From IMG/VR virus record IMGVR_UViG_3300047319_001872, positions 1-64,000 of that record: DNA of 64,000 nt, one strand, 5' to 3'. The notes under the pieces were generated by a model. It was not told the DNA's origin. It was given only the letters and a program-made list of their open reading frames with translations, and ran no database searches. Positions 6,827 through 60,066 of this stretch are shown piece after piece; the first letter of the stretch is position 1; every line of letters begins with the position of its first letter. Position numbers and translations under genes: made by a program.

Positions 6827-8068
6827 ATGGTAGACGTTTCTATCAAGGGCGTGTTTGAGAGCGAGTGTGCCCACCTCGCGCTGGACGCGCAATTGGCCAA
6901 ACGCATCCATTTGTACACAGTCGGTTTCGCCCATAAAAACCAGGACCACATCGAGTTCTTTGGCGGGAACCTGACCGGTGTGCAAGTGGTGCGCTTTACT
7001 GACAGTGATAAAGACCGCTGGTTCACCGAGATTCTCCAAGCGGACGAAAGCACACTCGAAGCACGGCTGGTGGCGCTGCCCACGGTCAACAGTGACTGGG
7101 TGGTGTCCTCCGACACGCTCAATCTTTCCTGTGCCTGGCTCTTGCATGCGTTGCTCCACAGCAAGAAGCTAAGCGACGCTCAGCGTCATCAGGCGATGTT
7201 GGATGTCGTCCTGGTGATGCAGTACAAGTTCCTCACATCCCGTCTGTACCGGCACTTTAAGTACCCGGCGGATCGTGCGACGGCAGAAGCCACGTATGCA
7301 GCCCTGACGTTTAAGTATGCGATTAAACAGTACGGCTCTTGGGCCGCAGTGCTCAATGCCCGCGCCGAAGAAGTGATCAGCCCGACCGGTCTTCACCGCA
7401 AAGCCATCGAACTGATGGACCCCGATAGCACCGTCATTTATTTGCTCAATGATACGCAAGGCCGGATTCGTGACATGTTGAAAAACATTTACGATGTCTT
7501 CTTGCAAGTGCATCGGCAGGGTATCAAGATCAGCTCGACGAGTTCGCTAGTCGAACACGACGGGGTCGAGATCTTGAAGGACAAGTCGAAAAACCTCCTG
7601 GCTTACACCAGGTACATCAACTCGATCATCACCGACCGGAACTCCTTTATTCGCGAAGAGCTTCTCACTGTTATCGAGAAGCAGATGAAGACGATGCCGC
7701 CCCGTCTTTTCCGCGAATCGCTCGAATGGATGTCGGACAATTACCGCCAGTCCGGCGCGAGCATGATCGAAGAGCTGCTTAACGAAACCCTGATCCACAG
7801 TTTTGACTACCTCGCGGAGAATCGGAACTTGGTGAGGAATTCTACGGACTTGGCCAGCCTACTCACACGCTTGCGTGGTGTGTACATGAGTTCGCGGTCC
7901 ACGGACCCTGCTCTGTTCTCGCTGCGGGAGAAAGCAGAAAAGATCGTGAAGCTCGCGACTAACAATAAGAACTCCAGTGTGATTGCGGCTGTGCGCACCG
8001 GGATACTGCTGTACTTGATCGCCCGCGCGTATTCGATGCGGTATTACTCCCAGAGCGCCGCTGCATAA
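6827..8068 (+). CDS. conserved phiKZ-like virion structural protein
   Basis: 413-aa ORF; N-terminal HIEFFGGNL.GVQVVRFT segment recalled from phiKZ-like phages; lies upstream of terminase. Confidence 0.75.
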   Translation: MVDVSIKGVFESECAHLALDAQLAKRIHLYTVGFAHKNQDHIEFFGGNLTGVQVVRFTDSDKDRWFTEILQADESTLEARLVALPTVNSDWVVSSDTLNLSCAWLLHALLHSKKLSDAQRHQAMLDVVLVMQYKFLTSRLYRHFKYPADRATAEATYAALTFKYAIKQYGSWAAVLNARAEEVISPTGLHRKAIELMDPDSTVIYLLNDTQGRIRDMLKNIYDVFLQVHRQGIKISSTSSLVEHDGVEILKDKSKNLLAYTRYINSIITDRNSFIREELLTVIEKQMKTMPPRLFRESLEWMSDNYRQSGASMIEELLNETLIHSFDYLAENRNLVRNSTDLASLLTRLRGVYMSSRSTDPALFSLREKAEKIVKLATNNKNSSVIAAVRTGILLYLIARAYSMRYYSQSAAA

Positions 8069-8095
8069 GGCTTGGTCGCACGACCAGGTTCTACC

Positions 8096-8506
8096 ATGTC
8101 GCTTTTGAAGAGGTTAGCTACCCGAGGGTTCCTGTGGCTGGAGCACGTAAAGGGTAACAGGTCGTTCCAGCAAGAGATCGTGATCCAGACGAATCGCCGT
8201 AATACGCTTCGGGTGATTCATCATTCGGGTTACGACATCACCATCTACTGTCAGCGCTTGCAGTTCGAGACGGGCTACTCGCTCTGGCAATGGCCGAAGA
8301 AGAAACACCTGGCTTACCAGTTGTTTTCAACGACGACCAATGATGCACCGGAACTGATTCGTCGGGCATGTGACTTAGCGGTTACATTGCCTGCCCTGTG
8401 TCCCGGTTATGTAGAAGACGAAGTGCAAAAGCTCTACGCCATTGATGCGTACGTGGATTTGATCACGGACAAATTAAGAGCGCTCAAGCAAAGTAGCTTC
8501 ATCTAG
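8096..8506 (+). CDS. hypothetical protein (MSLLKRLATRG...)
   Basis: ORF track; ATG at 8096. Confidence 0.65.
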   Translation: MSLLKRLATRGFLWLEHVKGNRSFQQEIVIQTNRRNTLRVIHHSGYDITIYCQRLQFETGYSLWQWPKKKHLAYQLFSTTTNDAPELIRRACDLAVTLPALCPGYVEDEVQKLYAIDAYVDLITDKLRALKQSSFI

Positions 8507-8513
8507 CGCGTAT

Positions 8514-8542
8514 GGGGGAGGCTTCGGCCTCCCTCTATGCCG
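8514..8542 (+). terminator. GC hairpin followed by TATGCCG
   Basis: GGGGGAGGC-TTCG-GCCTCCCTC then TATGCCG. Confidence 0.65.
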
Positions 8543-8583
8543 CATCAGTATGATTACATTTACAGAAGACTCAGGGCAAGTAA

Positions 8584-9402
8584 ATGAACGAAACAATAGA
8601 CAATGTTGTAGACAGCTATGTTCCCCCGTTTACGGGCGAGCATCCCTACTACAAAGGGTATTACCAAGTCCCAGTTGGTCAAAGTCATGTGGTGATTAAC
8701 AAGCGTGGCGAGCTCATCAATCTCATTACAGGCGAGAAACACTTCACGCGGATTGCCGGGAGAGGGTACGTAATTACCACGCTCTGTGACGATGGGATTT
8801 GGAAAAACTACTTAGTCCATCGGCTGGTAGCTTTGCTGTTCGTGGATAAACCTGAACGACACAAAGAGATCAGCTTCGATGAATTGCAAGTGAACCATAT
8901 CGACGGTGACAAGCTGAACAACGTTTGGGATAACCTCGAGTGGGTCACTGGTGAAGAAAACATGAAGCATGCCCGAGAGCACGGGTTGTTTAGCAACCAG
9001 CTCAAGGTTTTGTCCAAAGACGTAGAGACTGGCGAAATGGAGAGCTACTACTCGGTAAGCGAGTGTGCTCGAAAAGCCGGTGTGACCCAGTCGGTCATGT
9101 TCATCCACCTCTGGTCTGTGGCAGCCGGTCGAATCAAACACCTAGGCCGGGTGTACAAGTTCGATGACGGAAAACCATGGCCTGAATTCCTTGCTCCGGA
9201 TGATAGCGAGGAGTACACGCTAGGCAGGGTCTGCGATATTGTCGGAGAGAATATCGAAACAGGTGAACGCACACTTTTTTGTTCAGTCAAACACGCTTGC
9301 CGATTGCTAAAGCTCGACATCGTCGGGTATCGCAATCATAAGGCACGAAAGGGAGCCGCTACCCCCTACAAGGGTTGGCTCTTTTCTCCATTAACCGAAT
9401 GA
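8584..9402 (+). CDS. HNH homing endonuclease (HNH_3 type with NUMOD1-like C-terminal repeats)
   Basis: VHRLVA...[11 protein letters not shown]...NLEWVT..EN motif; two S-V-x-x-A helix-turn-helix-like repeats; codon usage more AT-rich than neighbours. Confidence 0.9.
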
Positions 9403-9411
9403 GGTGACATT

Positions 9412-11679
9412 ATCATACTCTTCGAACAGGACTGGTATCGTTATCCGACCGCGATCATCGACACCAAGACCACCAACAAAAGTTGGATTCGTCTGGCAGC
9501 GGTGTATCGCTCGATGGGTATCAAGAACCACGCCTTCCTGCTCGCGCTGGTGAATCCGAAACTGCAAGGGGTGGACCCCTTCAGCAAGGACCTCACTCCT
9601 GAGCAGATGTACATGATCGCTGTCGAGTGCAAGATCAACCCCTGGTACTTCTTCCGGGAAATCGCACGGGCTCCGGGTAACTCCGGTTCCGATGCGGTGC
9701 CCTTGGAAGCCAACCGGGCGAACATTGCGCTCTACTGGTCCTTCTTTAACCACATCTTCTTTACGCTCATTCAGCCACGTCAGACCGGCAAGTCGTTCTC
9801 GACTGATACGCTGATGAGCTACCTGATGAACGTCGTCTGTACGGGTACCAGCATCAACCTGTTGACGAAGGACGATAACCTGCGCCGCAAGAATATCGAG
9901 CGGATCAAGGAAATCATGTCCGAGCTGCCACCGTACCTGAGCCAACGCTCGAAGGACGATGCGCAGAACGGTGAAGAAATCACCGTGAAGGCCTTGAAGA
10001 ATTCGTACAACACGCACGTGCCGCAATCGAGCCCGAAGCGTGCGTACAACATGGGTCGAGGTCTCACGACCGCGATCTTCCACATCGACGAGCCGCCGTT
10101 CCAGCCCAATATCGCGATTGCATTGCCTGCTGCTCTGGCTGCTACCGGCGCCGCTGTGGAACGGGCCAAGGCCGCGGGCGCGCCGTACGGGACGATCCTG
10201 ACGACGACCGCAGGCAAGAAGGACGACCGCGATGGTCGCTTCATCTACAAGCTGCTGGAAGACTCAGCTTCGTGGACTGAGAAGTTCTTCGACTGCCAGA
10301 ACTGGGCTGAACTCGATCGCATGGTCCGTCGTAATAGCCGCGCGGGTCTGTTCCGGATCAATGGCACCTTCAGTCACCGTCAGTTGGGTAAGAGCGATGA
10401 GTGGCTCAAGCAGAAGATTGAAGAATCGCTGCAGACCGGTGATGATGCGAACCGAGATTACTTTAACCTGTGGACCTCGGGTACGGAAAGCTCCCCGCTC
10501 TCCACCAGCACGGCTGAGATGATCGCTTCGTCGCGTCTGGACGAGCTCTACACTTCCATCAGTGATCCGGACGGCTACATCACGCGCTGGTACATTGCAC
10601 AGGAAGAGATTGAAGAGCGCATGGCGACCGGCAAATTCGTGCTTGGCATGGATACGTCTGAAGCAGGCGGGGGCGATGACATTTCCCTCGTCTTGATGGA
10701 TGTGGAAACCCTGGAGGTGGTCGCAGCGGGCTCGTATAACGAAACCAACCTGATTACCTTCTCCAAGTGGGTGTGCGATACGCTTGTCAGGTATTCGAAC
10801 ATCACAGCAGTCATCGAGCGGCGCTCCACTGGGGCGATGTTGCTGGACTACCTGCTCCTGATGTTGCCCAACTATGGCGAAGATCCGTTTAAACGCGTCT
10901 TTAACAAGGTGGTGCAGGATTACGACGAGTATCCGGATCGCTTCAAGGAAATCAAGGTGCCAATCGGTCGTCGTCCGACTGACATCTACGTGCGCTACAA
11001 GACCACGTTCGGCTTTGCCACCTCCGGTTCGGGGGCCAACAGTCGCAATGCCTTGTATGGTCAGGTGCTTCAAGCTGCGGCCCAGCGCAGCGGCATGAAG
11101 GTGCATGACAAGATGCTCGCCGGGCAGATCCTCGGTCTCGTGTACAAGAATGGTCGCATCGACCACGAAGATGGCGAACACGATGACTTGGTGATCGGCT
11201 GGTTGTTGTGTCACTGGTTCCTCATGCATGGCAAGAACCTGCAACACTATGGCATCGATCCCCGCCAGGTTATGTGTGCAGTCAAAACCAAGCAGACTGA
11301 GTCGCAAGAGGACTTCTTCCGGCGCATGGAGCAACAGACTGTGCGCAGTCGCATCGAGGAGATCTACAACGCACTCACCGGTGAGCACGATGACTTTGTG
11401 GCCGCGCGTCTGGAGCAGGAGCTGCGTATGCTGGATAAGAAGATCATCCTCGAACAGGATGAGATCTATTCGGTGGACGAACTCATCCGCAGTGCTCGGG
11501 AAACCAAGCGCAATAAGGTGAGGACCTCGAACCTGTACCAGCAAAGCCAGCAGAACCAGTACCTCGGTCACAATACGGGGATGCTGGTGACGAGCGAGTT
11601 ACCGATGACGCATGTGGACATGTTTGGTGCACCGGCTAACTACGGCGTGTATTCGACAGCCTCAGGCGCTCGTTGGTAA
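9412..11679 (+). CDS. terL: terminase large subunit (phiKZ gp25-like); the start codon appears non-canonical
   Basis: Walker A-like QPRQTGKS, Walker B FHIDE, RNase H-like nuclease LGMDTSE...HDDLVIGW; the frame is open from 9403 and encodes ILFEQDWYRYPTAIID upstream of the track's GTG at 9502. Confidence 0.92.
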   Translation: MILFEQDWYRYPTAIIDTKTTNKSWIRLAAVYRSMGIKNHAFLLALVNPKLQGVDPFSKDLTPEQMYMIAVECKINPWYFFREIARAPGNSGSDAVPLEANRANIALYWSFFNHIFFTLIQPRQTGKSFSTDTLMSYLMNVVCTGTSINLLTKDDNLRRKNIERIKEIMSELPPYLSQRSKDDAQNGEEITVKALKNSYNTHVPQSSPKRAYNMGRGLTTAIFHIDEPPFQPNIAIALPAALAATGAAVERAKAAGAPYGTILTTTAGKKDDRDGRFIYKLLEDSASWTEKFFDCQNWAELDRMVRRNSRAGLFRINGTFSHRQLGKSDEWLKQKIEESLQTGDDANRDYFNLWTSGTESSPLSTSTAEMIASSRLDELYTSISDPDGYITRWYIAQEEIEERMATGKFVLGMDTSEAGGGDDISLVLMDVETLEVVAAGSYNETNLITFSKWVCDTLVRYSNITAVIERRSTGAMLLDYLLLMLPNYGEDPFKRVFNKVVQDYDEYPDRFKEIKVPIGRRPTDIYVRYKTTFGFATSGSGANSRNALYGQVLQAAAQRSGMKVHDKMLAGQILGLVYKNGRIDHEDGEHDDLVIGWLLCHWFLMHGKNLQHYGIDPRQVMCAVKTKQTESQEDFFRRMEQQTVRSRIEEIYNALTGEHDDFVAARLEQELRMLDKKIILEQDEIYSVDELIRSARETKRNKVRTSNLYQQSQQNQYLGHNTGMLVTSELPMTHVDMFGAPANYGVYSTASGARW

Positions 11680-11695: not shown

Positions 11696-11735
11696 CAGCA
11701 TAGAGCCCAGGGGTTTCCCCCTGGGCCTTATGACG
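11696..11735. terminator. bidirectional hairpin element at a convergent junction
   Basis: CAGCATA...CCCAGGGG-TTTC-CCCCTGGG...TATGACG. Confidence 0.7.
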
Positions 11736-40704: not shown

Positions 40705-40707
40705 CAC

Positions 40708-40735
40708 GAGGGGAGCTTCGGCTCCCCTCTTTATT
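40708..40735 (+). terminator. GC hairpin followed by TTTATTTCG
   Basis: GAGGGGAGC-TTCG-GCTCCCCTC. Confidence 0.6.
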
Positions 40736-40749
40736 TCGTAGGAGCAGCC

Positions 40750-42861
40750 GTGGCTTCAACAGTCTCGCTGAACAATCTTGAAAAAGACGCGTCCTGGGTG
40801 CGGCAGTCTTTTCTGGTGAACCTGTCTCACCTGCAGCCGGTGGATCAGCAAAACCGGATCTTCACACCGGTGAGTCTGGACTTTCAGGACACCCGTCCGG
40901 GTGGGAGTTTGTGTATCAATCCGCCCCCGCAGTTTACCCGCAACGCGGATCTGAAACCACGCGCGCCGAATGGGAGTTGGAACCCCAACCAGGTCAATCG
41001 GGCTGGGAATACCGGCTATGGTCGCTACTACGGGGAAGCGATCGCGGCGAACTCACAGATCATCAATATCCGCTGTGGCTTGCCTTCGTTCAATTCACTG
41101 ACGACCTTCTTCACCGGCTTCTATAACACCAGTGCCGGTACGCTGGCGCGTACCGGTCGCGCACCGTCGGCGTTTTATGAGCTGGGGCGTGCCGCTGGTT
41201 TTGTGGTCTCGATCCTGTCATGGAAGTTGCTGGCAGTCACGCTCCTCGGTAACGCGGCGCGCTTCTTTCTGCAAAAGCCCTCGAGTAAGTTCTACTACTC
41301 GAAGCCCGCCATGCCGCTTTACTGGAATGCGGTGACCACCATCGTCAACCAGATTGCAGTGAACATGGGGATTGTGCCGCGCATTGGCGGCACTTCGATG
41401 GCCCAGCAGTTGGGCGAAGGCTATCAGTTCGACGCCAAGGCCCAGACGCAACTGCATCAGCTCTTGCCCGACATCATCAACGAAGGCGGTTCGATTAACG
41501 TCTACGCGATGGCTAACCGGGCGCAACGTCTGGCCACCCTGCATCAGAACAACCTGAAGCAGGCGTTTAATACCGATAACCTCGATCTGACGAGCGCAGT
41601 GCAGAAGGCGTATAGCCAGTCGCTGAAAGATAACGGCGGCACAGGCTGGAGTGATTACCTGAAGAAATGGCTGGGCTCCTCTCAGGCCATCCCCCAAGCG
41701 GCGGGTAACGGCGGCGAGAGTTCGACCACGGAGTCGCTCAATAACGACGACACGGGGACGACTGCGCCCAATCAGGCCTACGATGCGGGCTTCTTTGATT
41801 TTCTCGGTGCAGAGATCAATGACGGGTCGGCTTTTGTCGGCTTCCGGGTCAACGCAACCGGGCCGGTGGGTGAGTCGTTTTCCAGCCAAGCCCAGGAATC
41901 AGAAATTGCGCAGAAGATCAATAGCATCTCCTCCCAGGCGCGATCGGCGGAGTTTGATCTGGCCAATGGTAATCTGGGCGGCGGTGCCATCGGTAGCATG
42001 GTCACCAGTGCCTTCGGGGCCGTGGGGAATTTCATCAAGGGCGGGCTGGACTCCCTACACTTGTCCGGCTTGGCAGCCCTGGGCGGGGCCGCGTTCGTGG
42101 ACATCCCGCGTTCCTGGCAGTCCTCGGCTGCGTCCTTGCCGCGGATGAGCTACACCATCAACCTGGTGAGCCCGTACGGTAATCGCGTCTCGCAGCTACT
42201 GAATCTGTACGTGCCGCTCGCGATGCTGTTGGCGATGACCTTGCCGATTGCGACGGGTAAGCAGTCGTACACCAGTCCGTTCCTGTGCGAGATCTTTGAC
42301 CGGGGTCGCTGCCAGTCGCGTTTGTCCATGGTGGAGAGCTTGTCCATTACCCGCGGTACGGGTAACACGGGCTTTAACAACAAGGGCCACGCGATGGGCA
42401 TTGAAGTGAGCATTACGTTCATGGACATGTCCACCGTGCTGGCGATGCCGATCAGTCAGGGTTTCTCCTCCAATGCCACAGCAGCAGGCAGTGAACTGGG
42501 CGCGGTCGCAGGAGGCGTGGTGGGTGCAGGCGGTGGTCCGCTGACTGCGATCGGAGGTGCAGCACTCGGCGGAGCAATTGGTGGCGCGCTCGGCGCAGGT
42601 GCCGATGCCTTGAACAATGCCGCGCAAACCATCGGCTCGATCTTCGACGATGACAATACCTTCACGGATTACATGGCAGTGTTGTCAGGCATGGGTCTCA
42701 CGGACCAGATTTACTCGATGAACAAGTTCAAGCTTAACTTGACGCGCGCCATGACAAGCTGGAAGACCTGGTATAGCACGGCGCACTTTGCCAGCTTTGC
42801 CGGGGATACCCTGCCGGGCAGTTTAGTCTCCGCGATCTTTGGTCGCACCGTCCGTAACTAA
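40750..42861 (+). CDS. virion structural/baseplate protein (phiKZ gp182-like)
   Basis: 703 aa after the tail lysin; C-terminal glycine-zipper segment; GGAG SD before GTG. Confidence 0.75.
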   Translation: MASTVSLNNLEKDASWVRQSFLVNLSHLQPVDQQNRIFTPVSLDFQDTRPGGSLCINPPPQFTRNADLKPRAPNGSWNPNQVNRAGNTGYGRYYGEAIAANSQIINIRCGLPSFNSLTTFFTGFYNTSAGTLARTGRAPSAFYELGRAAGFVVSILSWKLLAVTLLGNAARFFLQKPSSKFYYSKPAMPLYWNAVTTIVNQIAVNMGIVPRIGGTSMAQQLGEGYQFDAKAQTQLHQLLPDIINEGGSINVYAMANRAQRLATLHQNNLKQAFNTDNLDLTSAVQKAYSQSLKDNGGTGWSDYLKKWLGSSQAIPQAAGNGGESSTTESLNNDDTGTTAPNQAYDAGFFDFLGAEINDGSAFVGFRVNATGPVGESFSSQAQESEIAQKINSISSQARSAEFDLANGNLGGGAIGSMVTSAFGAVGNFIKGGLDSLHLSGLAALGGAAFVDIPRSWQSSAASLPRMSYTINLVSPYGNRVSQLLNLYVPLAMLLAMTLPIATGKQSYTSPFLCEIFDRGRCQSRLSMVESLSITRGTGNTGFNNKGHAMGIEVSITFMDMSTVLAMPISQGFSSNATAAGSELGAVAGGVVGAGGGPLTAIGGAALGGAIGGALGAGADALNNAAQTIGSIFDDDNTFTDYMAVLSGMGLTDQIYSMNKFKLNLTRAMTSWKTWYSTAHFASFAGDTLPGSLVSAIFGRTVRN

Positions 42862-42865
42862 TCGA

Positions 42866-42903
42866 CGGCATAGAGGCCAGGGGAAACCCTGGCCCTTATG
42901 ACG
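42866..42903. terminator. bidirectional hairpin element at a convergent junction
   Basis: CGGCATA...GGCCAGGG-GAAA-CCCTGGCC...TATGACG. Confidence 0.72.
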
Positions 42904-44492: not shown

Positions 44493-44519
44493 GGGCATAG
44501 GGGAGGCCGAAGCCTCCCC
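44493..44519 (-). terminator. GC hairpin followed by TATGCCC and a T-rich run on the minus strand
   Basis: Minus strand GGGGAGGC-TTCG-GCCTCCCC-TATGCCC then CTTCTTCTTTTTTTTT. Confidence 0.7.
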
Positions 44520-60030: not shown

Positions 60031-60066
60031 CGGCATAGAGGGAGGCTTCGGCCTCCCCTTATGTCC
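60031..60066. terminator. bidirectional hairpin element at a convergent junction
   Basis: CGGCATA...GGGAGGC-TTCG-GCCTCCC...TATGTCC. Confidence 0.72.

What the first reader, a model, noticed from the sequence alone, without database searches (positions are those of the whole stretch)
8584..9504. Terminase has no canonical start codon and lies in frame behind an HNH gene, separated by a single TGA
Seen: the HNH ORF (8584-9402) and terL share a frame. After TGA (9400-9402) the frame reads GGT GAC ATT ATC ATA CTC TTC GAA CAG GAC TGG..., encoding IILFEQDWYRYPTAIIDTKTTNKSWIRLAA, with no ATG/GTG/TTG until GTG 9502. A GAGGT Shine-Dalgarno (9401-9405) overlaps the HNH stop, 6 nt before ATC 9412. From memory, phiKZ-like terminases start M-I-L-F-x-x-D-W, which puts ATC 9412 at the Met position. 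Inference: terL starts at a non-AUG codon under translational coupling to the endonuclease, or TGA read-through makes an HNH-terminase fusion. Either would tie an essential packaging gene to a selfish element. There is no room for a group I intron core.
Basis: partly seen in the sequence, partly recalled or inferred. Interest (0 to 1): 0.7.

Follow-up and report, generated by a model that had tools for sequence, protein, structure and literature searches.

The report
Jumbo-phage terminase gene with non-AUG start
The large terminase gene of this jumbo phage really has no normal start codon and most likely begins at an AUC/AUU codon behind a very strong ribosome-binding site. Relatives that lack the neighbouring mobile HNH endonuclease gene show the same feature, so the endonuclease is not its cause.

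Summary
HNH ORF 8584-9402 and terL share a frame. After TGA 9400-9402 there is no in-frame ATG, GTG or TTG until GTG 9502. ATC 9412 aligns exactly with the ATG of Burkholderia phage FLC9 terL and with the M of the family-wide MILFxxDW N-terminus. Several independent assemblies carry ATC, so it is not a sequencing error.

The link to HNH is not causal. HNH-less relatives, including a complete 310-kb genome, have ATT at this codon and no canonical alternative. Five more distant phiKZ-like lineages have ATA, ATC or ATT behind a strong Shine-Dalgarno sequence. In total 6-8 of 65 TerL lineages lack a canonical start, against 0 of 57 for a neighbouring control gene.

Codons 2-30 are under purifying selection. 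The window's terL Shine-Dalgarno sequence (GAGGTGA, -13 kcal/mol) is stronger than those of all 55 reference genes in the genome.

Best explanation: near-cognate AUH initiation with fMet. In the window, ribosomes finishing HNH 9 nt upstream may add to this, but that is untested. Read-through fusion, frameshifting, a group I intron and a truncated TerL are disfavoured.

The HNH gene is a mobile cassette (8544-9402) from a family that repeatedly sits at the terL start.

The parts
8516..8539 (+). GC-rich hairpin (stem 8516-8522 / 8527-8533) followed by TATG (8536-8539). This is a putative terminator plus a phiKZ-type late promoter, with G 8539 as the likely transcription start.
   Evidence: Sequence. 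The genome holds 53 such hairpin+TATG modules against 2-7 in shuffles, and near-identical copies lie at 44494-44519 and 262409-262432. In phiKZ the late promoter is TATG with G as +1 (PMC4666361). The function here is inferred.
8544..9402 (+). Mobile HNH cassette of 859 nt. It replaces 111 nt of the native terL 5' UTR.
   Evidence: In runs X6 and X12 an HNH-less contig joins 8543 to 9403 with 111 other letters, alongside the HNH-carrying form. The alignment of HNH-carrying and HNH-less alleles shows the same. The HNH gene is absent from G001, G002 and FLC9.
8584..9402 (+). HNH homing endonuclease gene, 272 aa, with an I-HmuI-like architecture.
   Evidence: Pfam HNH_3 and I-HmuI NUMOD-like. PHROG HNH families. 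Single copy in the genome. Homologues sit directly 5' of terL in L012, RTH11, L128/L163, L166 and L205.
9401..9407 (+). Extended Shine-Dalgarno sequence GAGGTGA, overlapping the HNH stop codon.
   Evidence: Its duplex with the 16S 3' tail is -13.0 kcal/mol. That is stronger than all 55 anchored reference starts in the genome, which have mean -6.3, sd 2.7 and minimum -12.3.
9404..9553 (+). Out-of-frame GTG ORF of 49 aa. Its GTG lies inside the GGTGAC motif.
   Evidence: Listed. The same GTG is in frame with terL in L013 and RTH11, and is shifted by 1 nt in the window, L008 and L010. It is probably not used.
9409..9417 (+). Three consecutive near-cognate start candidates, ATT ATC ATA. ATC 9412-9414 occupies the position of the family's Met codon.
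   Evidence: The spacings from GAGG are 4, 7 and 10 nt.
9412..11679 (+). terL (large terminase subunit), 755 codons plus the stop.
   Evidence: 89.5% amino-acid identity to FLC9 gp25 over residues 1-755. phrog_2 terminase large subunit. Codons 2-30 show synonymous-only differences against close relatives.
11707..11732 (+). Hairpin+TATG module after the terL stop. It probably marks the end of the HNH-terL transcription unit.
   Evidence: No such module lies between 8539 and terL.

Best explanation
terL is translated from a near-cognate AUH codon with initiator fMet-tRNA. The most likely codon is AUC 9412, which occupies the ancestral AUG position; AUU 9409 cannot be excluded. An unusually strong Shine-Dalgarno sequence (GAGGUGA, 9401-9407) positions the ribosome. 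The product is a normal M-I-L-F-E-Q-D-W TerL, probably at a low rate.

This is a property of the terL start region in this phage family and not of the HNH insertion. The start codon flips among ATG, ATT, ATC and ATA in several phiKZ-like lineages, with and without HNH.

The HNH gene is a free-standing homing endonuclease cassette that replaced the native 5' UTR. HNH and terL are therefore probably co-transcribed from the TATG late promoter at 8536-8539.

Shown: the anatomy, the lack of a canonical start, selection on the N-terminus, recurrence across lineages, Shine-Dalgarno strength, and HNH mobility.

Inferred: actual initiation at AUC or AUU, low output, the transcription start, and any boost from ribosomes terminating at the HNH UGA 9 nt upstream.
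For: - ATC aligns with the ATG of FLC9 and with the M of MILFxxDW in the large majority of relatives.
- The in-frame stop lies 4 codons upstream, and the first canonical codon lies 30 codons downstream.
- Codons 2-30 are under purifying selection: window vs L008 has 7 synonymous and 0 nonsynonymous differences, window vs L018 has 9 and 0, and L008 vs L010 has 13 and 2. L3, D7 and W8 are invariant in a 12-sequence family alignment.
- HNH-less genomes have ATT with no canonical alternative. This includes the complete genome G001 and an L008-type allele at 533x word depth in run X12.
- Independent distant cases all have GGAG-type Shine-Dalgarno sequences 5-8 nt upstream: L145 (ATA), L159/L161 (ATC), L164 and L199 (ATT), L205 (ATC).
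- 10 of 80 TerL loci (6-8 of 65 lineages) lack a canonical start, against 0 of 71 loci (0 of 57 lineages) for the neighbouring phrog_2921 gene. Fisher p is 0.0017 for loci and 0.03-0.007 for lineages.
- Within the genome, terL is the only true ATG-to-ATY change among about 111 orthologues whose alignment reaches the FLC9 start.
- The Shine-Dalgarno sequence is the strongest of 56 tested.
- In E. coli, AUA, AUC, AUU and CUG initiate at 1-2% of AUG, and an AUC-initiated protein carries N-terminal Met (bioRxiv 10.1101/063800).
- The phage encodes no initiator or Ile tRNA and no IF3 domain, so host rules apply.
Against: - There is no protein or ribosome-profiling evidence, and no RNA run was listed.
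- Near-cognate codons are weak in E. coli. The host here is unknown, and whether 1-2% output suffices for TerL is assumed.
- L013 and RTH11 have an in-frame GTG three codons upstream. The shared GGTGAC motif could therefore be a former GTG start rather than only a Shine-Dalgarno sequence.
- In L008 and L010 an A-AAA run would allow a -1 slip from that GTG.
- The comparison of Shine-Dalgarno strength with start codon rests on few, related lineages.
- The local hairpin that pairs the Shine-Dalgarno sequence with the start is no stronger than in shuffles, so there is no structural support for coupling.
Confidence: 0.7

Rival explanations
1. UGA 9400-9402 is read through, and functional terminase is made as an HNH-TerL fusion about 31 kDa larger than TerL.
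For: HNH and terL are in frame, separated by 3 sense codons. L012 has the same 9-nt spacing. UGA is the leakiest stop codon (general knowledge).
Against: HNH-less relatives with ATT have no upstream ORF to fuse to. Related HNH genes are out of frame with terL in RTH11, L128 and L205. L012 has TAG plus a normal ATG. No structure stands out downstream (z -0.57). The family N-terminus is a free MILF end in nearly all relatives.
Confidence: 0.05
2. Initiation occurs at the out-of-frame GTG 9404 inside GGTGAC, followed by a -1 ribosomal frameshift into the terL frame.
For: This GTG is in frame in L013 and RTH11, and exactly 1 nt out of frame in the window, L008 and L010. L008 and L010 have A-AAA at the required place.
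Against: The window has no slippery sequence (GTG ACA TTA TC). The GTG has no Shine-Dalgarno sequence of its own because it lies inside the Shine-Dalgarno-like motif. Distant AUH cases (L145, L164, L199) have no such GTG.
Confidence: 0.04
3. TerL starts at GTG 9502 or ATG 9514, giving a protein 30-34 residues shorter. The upstream codons would then be a decaying remnant.
For: These are the first canonical in-frame codons. A gene caller restricted to ATG, GTG and TTG would be expected to pick them; the existing gene calls were not checked.
Against: Only synonymous differences occur in codons 2-30 between non-ATG lineages. L3, D7 and W8 are invariant family-wide. A strong Shine-Dalgarno sequence sits in front of 9412. 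The pattern persists in several diverged lineages and in complete, abundant genomes.
Confidence: 0.05
4. The HNH ORF lies in a group I intron, and splicing joins an upstream ATG (for example 8550) to the terL body.
For: phiKZ-like phages carry HNH-containing group I introns (general knowledge). ATGATT at 8550 superficially resembles the terL start.
Against: No Intron_gpI hit even at E<=10. Only about 37 non-ORF bases are available. The 8550 element belongs to the cassette's shared 5' end. HNH-less alleles carry 111 nt of unrelated UTR rather than a joined exon. No guanosine precedes a usable in-frame 3' splice site.
Confidence: 0.01
5. The missing start is a sequencing or assembly error, or belongs to a defective phage.
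For: The source is a single metagenome-derived record.
Against: The bases are identical in contigs from four runs and in two other IMG/VR assemblies. Some of the four runs may be the source sample. The genome is 100% complete with terminal repeats. Non-ATG alleles recur in other samples and lineages.
Confidence: 0.02

Closest known systems
E. coli infC and pcnB (AUU start codons)
   Same: Both use a near-cognate AUH initiation codon decoded by fMet-tRNA. Both have no canonical alternative and a Shine-Dalgarno sequence at normal spacing, and low output is expected.
   Different: This case is a phage packaging gene. The codon varies among ATG, ATT, ATC and ATA between close relatives. No IF3 feedback loop is evident. 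AUC and AUA are rarer than AUU. Nothing has been tested experimentally.
Free-standing HNH homing endonucleases (I-HmuI-like, T4 mob/seg type, intronless homing)
   Same: The protein has HNH_3 plus a NUMOD-like DNA-binding domain. It shows presence/absence polymorphism among near-identical genomes, and both alleles occur in one sample. A short tract of flanking target-gene sequence has been replaced: 13 of 18 L012-L010 differences lie in terL nt 1-30.
   Different: The cassette replaces a 5' UTR rather than inserting between intact signals. Its stop codon overlaps the target gene's Shine-Dalgarno sequence. The family keeps one address, immediately 5' of the terL start, across phages whose TerL is only about 47-65% identical. 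Cleavage specificity is unknown.
HK97 gp74-type HNH proteins that work with terminase
   Same: An HNH gene lies next to a terminase gene.
   Different: Those proteins are small and conserved, and they are required partners of terminase (general knowledge). Here the HNH is I-HmuI-like, is absent from close relatives that are complete genomes, and is therefore dispensable.
Termination-reinitiation coupling (trpB-trpA type, overlapping stop and start)
   Same: The upstream stop lies within 10 nt of the downstream start and overlaps its Shine-Dalgarno sequence. RTH11 has a true GTGA overlap.
   Different: Coupling is not needed to explain the non-AUG start, because HNH-less alleles have the same codon. 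It has not been tested.

Membership tests
Genes with a non-canonical (AUH) initiation codon | No ATG, GTG or TTG in frame between the upstream stop and the conserved coding sequence | tested here: met
   The stop lies 4 codons upstream and the first canonical codon 30 codons downstream.
Genes with a non-canonical (AUH) initiation codon | The region upstream of the first canonical codon is translated, shown by purifying selection | tested here: met
   7-13 synonymous against 0-2 nonsynonymous codon differences among non-ATG lineages. N-terminal residues are invariant.
Genes with a non-canonical (AUH) initiation codon | A Shine-Dalgarno sequence at functional spacing from the proposed codon | tested here: met
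   GAGGTGA lies 4-7 nt upstream at -13.0 kcal/mol, the strongest of 56 starts tested. GGAG-type Shine-Dalgarno sequences occur in all other AUH cases.
Genes with a non-canonical (AUH) initiation codon | N-terminal Met peptide or an initiating-ribosome footprint at the codon | not testable with these tools
   No RNA or ribosome-profiling run was listed. No proteomics data are available.
Free-standing HNH homing endonuclease | HNH catalytic domain plus a DNA-binding module | tested here: met
   HNH_3 at residues 77-127 and I-HmuI NUMOD-like at 226-245. phrog_59 at E 1e-34.
Free-standing HNH homing endonuclease | Presence/absence polymorphism at one site in otherwise syntenic genomes | tested here: met
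   Absent from G001, G002 and FLC9. Both alleles are present in runs X6 and X12. L012 carries it and L010 does not, with terL 99.2% identical.
Free-standing HNH homing endonuclease | Site-specific cleavage of the HNH-less allele and immunity of the HNH-carrying allele | not testable with these tools
   The only hint is the 30-nt substituted tract in L012.
Group I intron with an HNH ORF | Conserved catalytic core (P3-P9) | tested here: not met
   No Intron_gpI match at E<=10 in 8000-10000.
Group I intron with an HNH ORF | The intron-less allele equals the precise exon junction | tested here: not met
   The HNH-less allele has 111 nt of different sequence in place of the 859 nt.
Programmed stop-codon read-through | A conserved in-frame arrangement of the two ORFs and a conserved stop context or structure | tested here: not met
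   Of the six HNH-carrying lineages, two are in frame (window, L012) and three are out of frame (RTH11, L128, L205); L166 was not measured. The stops are TGA, TAG, TGA, TAG and TAA. No significant structure was found.
Programmed -1 frameshift from GTG 9404 | A slippery sequence at the shift site | tested here: not met
   The window reads GTG ACA TTA TCA. Only L008 and L010 have A-AAA.

The most novel reading that the evidence does not exclude
The terL start codon may be a target in a conflict with a homing endonuclease family that specialises in the terL 5' junction. Under this reading, ATG-to-ATT/ATC/ATA changes, and the substituted first 10 codons in L012, are cleavage-resistant or co-converted alleles. 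They would be tolerated because little TerL is needed, and they would be compensated by stronger Shine-Dalgarno sequences. A selfish element would then be shaping the translation-initiation signal of an essential gene across chimallivirus-like jumbo phages.
Probability: 0.2. Interest if true: 0.75.

Novelty: new member of a known kind. Interest (0 to 1): 0.55.

Why it matters
- Annotation: a gene caller that accepts only ATG, GTG and TTG would be expected to truncate TerL by about 30 conserved residues in these phages. That would affect TerL phylogenies and structure predictions. RTH11's GenBank record already lacks the HNH gene.
- Biology: confirmed AUH starts are very rare; in E. coli only infC and pcnB are confirmed. 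A conserved, essential phage gene that uses them in roughly a tenth of lineages offers a natural series (ATG, ATT, ATC, ATA with matched Shine-Dalgarno strengths). That series could be used to study how much initiation strength TerL needs, and whether weak initiation is selected, for example to limit a nuclease-containing motor protein.
- Mobile elements: the data define an HNH homing endonuclease family with a fixed address at the terL start in diverged jumbo phages. A 30-nt replacement tract is visible, and both alleles occur in the same rhizosphere samples.

Tried and rejected
- Rfam scan of 8000-10000 at E<=10 gave only chance-level hits and no intron.
- I first read 8550 ATGATT... as a possible exon 1 or remnant of the terL start. 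The alignment shows it belongs to the 5' end shared by the two HNH cassettes.
- A search for RNA runs listed none, so there is no transcript or splice evidence.
- Local RNA folds around the start are not distinguishable from shuffles in the window or in 8 relatives. The apparent hairpin at 9347-9387 uses its T-run inside the stem and was not called a terminator.
- The first genome-wide screen for conserved sequence upstream of canonical starts was swamped by shadow frames. After best-frame filtering, the other flagged genes were artefacts. One example is 40705, where a conserved terminator hairpin is read in frame.
- A phage-encoded tRNA or IF3 that might change initiation rules was not found.
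- Literature searches for AUU or ATT starts in terminase or jumbo-phage genes found nothing relevant.
- HNH presence does not predict the start codon. Among carriers, ATC occurs in the window and L205, ATG in L012, L128 and L166, and RTH11 is ambiguous.
Full report
**1. What is there**

The window is the first 64 kb of a 313,315-bp IMG/VR phage record with direct terminal repeats, rated 100% complete. The nearest isolate is Burkholderia jumbo phage FLC9, with TerL 89.5% identical over residues 1-755.

ORF 8584-9402 encodes a 272-aa HNH endonuclease. It matches Pfam HNH_3 and the I-HmuI NUMOD-like domain and PHROG HNH families. The following gene is the large terminase: phrog_2 at E 3.5e-56, with homologues in 315 phage records including phiKZ.

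TGA lies at 9400-9402, followed by GGT GAC ATT ATC ATA CTC TTC GAA CAG GAC TGG in the same frame. No ATG, GTG or TTG occurs until GTG 9502.

**2. Where TerL begins**

FLC9 terL starts ATG ATT CTC TTT GAA GAA GAT TGG, and its ATG aligns with window ATC 9412.

- Among 53 metagenomic relatives (46-97% identical in the first 180 residues), 36 have ATG exactly at this position. Nearly all the others have ATG one or two codons upstream.
- Among 68 further IMG/VR relatives, 50 have ATG there.
- L3, D7 and W8 are invariant in a 12-sequence alignment.

**3. Not an error**

Logan contigs from four rhizosphere runs cover 8400-9700 with no difference at 9412-9414. Some of these runs may be the source sample. 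Two other IMG/VR assemblies (L006, L007) are identical there.

**4. The non-AUG start does not depend on HNH**

Within the FLC9-like clade the start codon and HNH status are as follows.

| Locus | Codon at the Met position | HNH upstream |
|---|---|---|
| Window, L006, L007 | ATC | yes |
| L008, L009, L014 | ATT | no |
| L010, L011 | ATT | no |
| L013 | ATT, plus an in-frame GTG three codons upstream | no |
| L018, L017, L019, L021, FLC9 | ATG | no |
| L012 | ATG | yes |

In L008/L009/L014 and L010/L011 an in-frame stop lies 5-8 codons upstream, and the next canonical codon lies 25-30 codons downstream. L014 belongs to a complete 310-kb genome, G001. An L008-type HNH-less allele reaches 533x word depth in run X12. 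On a terL tree the codon state changes at least three times.

Codons 2-30 are under purifying selection in non-ATG lineages. The counts of synonymous and nonsynonymous codon differences are:

- window vs L008: 7 and 0
- window vs L018: 9 and 0
- L008 vs L010: 13 and 2

A truncated TerL starting at 9502 is therefore unlikely.

**5. Recurrence across the family**

More distant lineages also lack a canonical start. Each has a GGAG-type Shine-Dalgarno sequence 5-8 nt upstream.

| Locus | Codon | Note |
|---|---|---|
| L145 | ATA | |
| L159, L161 | ATC | |
| L164 | ATT | |
| L199 | ATT | |
| L205 | ATC | carries an HNH homologue upstream |

I applied one objective rule to all loci: no ATG, GTG or TTG between the upstream in-frame stop and residue 8.

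- TerL: 10 of 80 IMG/VR loci are flagged, and three more have only implausibly distant candidates.
- Control (the neighbouring conserved phrog_2921 gene, same collection): 0 of 71 loci are flagged.
- After clustering at 95% nucleotide identity: 6-8 of 65 TerL lineages against 0 of 57 control lineages.
- Fisher p is 0.0017 for loci and 0.03-0.007 for lineages.

Inside this genome, terL is the only genuine ATG-to-ATY replacement among about 111 orthologues whose alignment reaches the FLC9 start. Anchored reference starts are 51 ATG, 3 GTG and 1 TTG.

**6. Ribosome-binding site**

GAGGTGA (9401-9407) pairs with the 16S 3' tail at -13.0 kcal/mol. That is stronger than all 55 reference starts in the genome, which have mean -6.3 and minimum -12.3.

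- ATT alleles give -6.2 to -9.0 kcal/mol.
- ATG alleles give -3.6 to -6.4 kcal/mol.

This trend fits compensation, but it rests on few related lineages.

Spacing from GAGG is 4 nt to ATT 9409, 7 nt to ATC 9412 and 10 nt to ATA 9415. Several AUH cases have three or more consecutive ATH codons. Part of this arises because residue 2 is a conserved Ile.

**7. The HNH element**

The HNH gene is single-copy in this genome and absent from G001, G002 and FLC9.

Runs X6 and X12 contain both alleles. The HNH-less contigs join 8543 to 9403 with 111 other letters in between. The cassette is therefore 8544-9402, and it replaces the native 5' UTR.

L012 (HNH-carrying) and L010 (HNH-less) differ at 18 of 2265 terL positions. 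Thirteen of these lie in the first 30 nt, including ATG versus ATT. That is a sharp replacement tract of the kind expected from homing.

Related HNH genes (38-48% identical) sit immediately 5' of terL in four further places:

- Xanthomonas phage RTH11, where the stop TGA overlaps an in-frame GTG, followed by ACC GTC ATT ATC
- L128/L163
- L166
- L205

Their frame relative to terL varies, which argues against read-through fusion as a mechanism.

**8. Transcription (inferred)**

A GC-rich hairpin followed by TATG lies at 8516-8539. The genome has 53 such modules against 2-7 in shuffles. In phiKZ, TATG with G as +1 is the late promoter recognised by the non-virion RNA polymerase (PMC4666361). The next module lies after the terL stop, at 11707-11732. 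HNH and terL are therefore probably one late transcript.

**9. Mechanism**

The most economical reading is that host ribosomes, held by the strong Shine-Dalgarno sequence, initiate with fMet-tRNA at AUC 9412, or at AUU 9409. In E. coli, AUA, AUC, AUU and CUG give 1-2% of AUG output, and an AUC-initiated protein carries N-terminal Met (bioRxiv 10.1101/063800).

The phage encodes no initiator or Ile tRNA and no IF3 domain.

In the window, ribosomes terminating at the HNH UGA sit on the Shine-Dalgarno sequence 9 nt from the start and could reinitiate. That is plausible but unsupported by structure, and it is unnecessary in HNH-less relatives.

**10. Verdict**

The finding is a new and recurrent instance of a known kind of initiation, next to a typical but address-specific homing endonuclease. 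All functional steps are inferred from sequence.

Noticed in passing
window 8516-8539, 11699-11732, 42869-42900, 44496-44518, 60034-60063 and genome-wide: GC-rich hairpins followed within a few bases by TATG(C/A)CG occur 53 times in the genome, against 2-7 in shuffles, and are often bidirectional. They look like terminator plus phiKZ-type late-promoter cassettes.
   Followed up: partly
G000:C1:119290-119963 (outside the window): ARAGORN calls a cluster of four tRNAs. Two have unusual A34 anticodons: Phe-AAA and His-ATG. The others are Asn-GTT and Tyr-GTA.
   Followed up: no
L129:785-1573 (Xanthomonas phage RTH11, record 279584-280372): An intact HNH endonuclease ORF, 38% identical to the window's, is not annotated in the GenBank record. 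The record instead lists an antisense hypothetical protein and a short 3' fragment. The ORF's TGA overlaps the annotated GTG start of terL.
   Followed up: partly
L001:3947-3979 (FLC9); L008 about 2953-2979; L013; L018: The native terL 5' UTR of HNH-less relatives holds a conserved TATGATCT element. It opens a short uORF (M-I-S/L-N/D-...) ending 10-22 nt before terL. It could be a second TATG promoter or a leader peptide. HNH-carrying alleles have lost it.
   Followed up: no
window 9404-9553: A GTG-initiated 49-codon ORF overlaps the terL 5' end in another frame. Its GTG is the one that is in frame with terL in L013 and RTH11. This suggests a 1-nt deletion in the ancestry of the window, L008 and L010 alleles.
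   Followed up: partly
window 40705-40760: A conserved hairpin plus TTTATTT and a Shine-Dalgarno sequence precede a GTG-start gene. The element reads open in frame and mimicked an N-terminal extension in the screen. It is a false positive and not a second non-canonical start.
   Followed up: yes
runs X6 and X12 on window 8400-9700: HNH-carrying and HNH-less alleles of the terL upstream region occur together in the same rhizosphere samples. Word depths are 12.5 and 13.8 in X6, and about 2 and 533 in X12. The HNH-less contig is an L008-type relative about 8% diverged over 9403-9698, so related HNH-carrying and HNH-less phages co-occur in one sample.
   Followed up: partly
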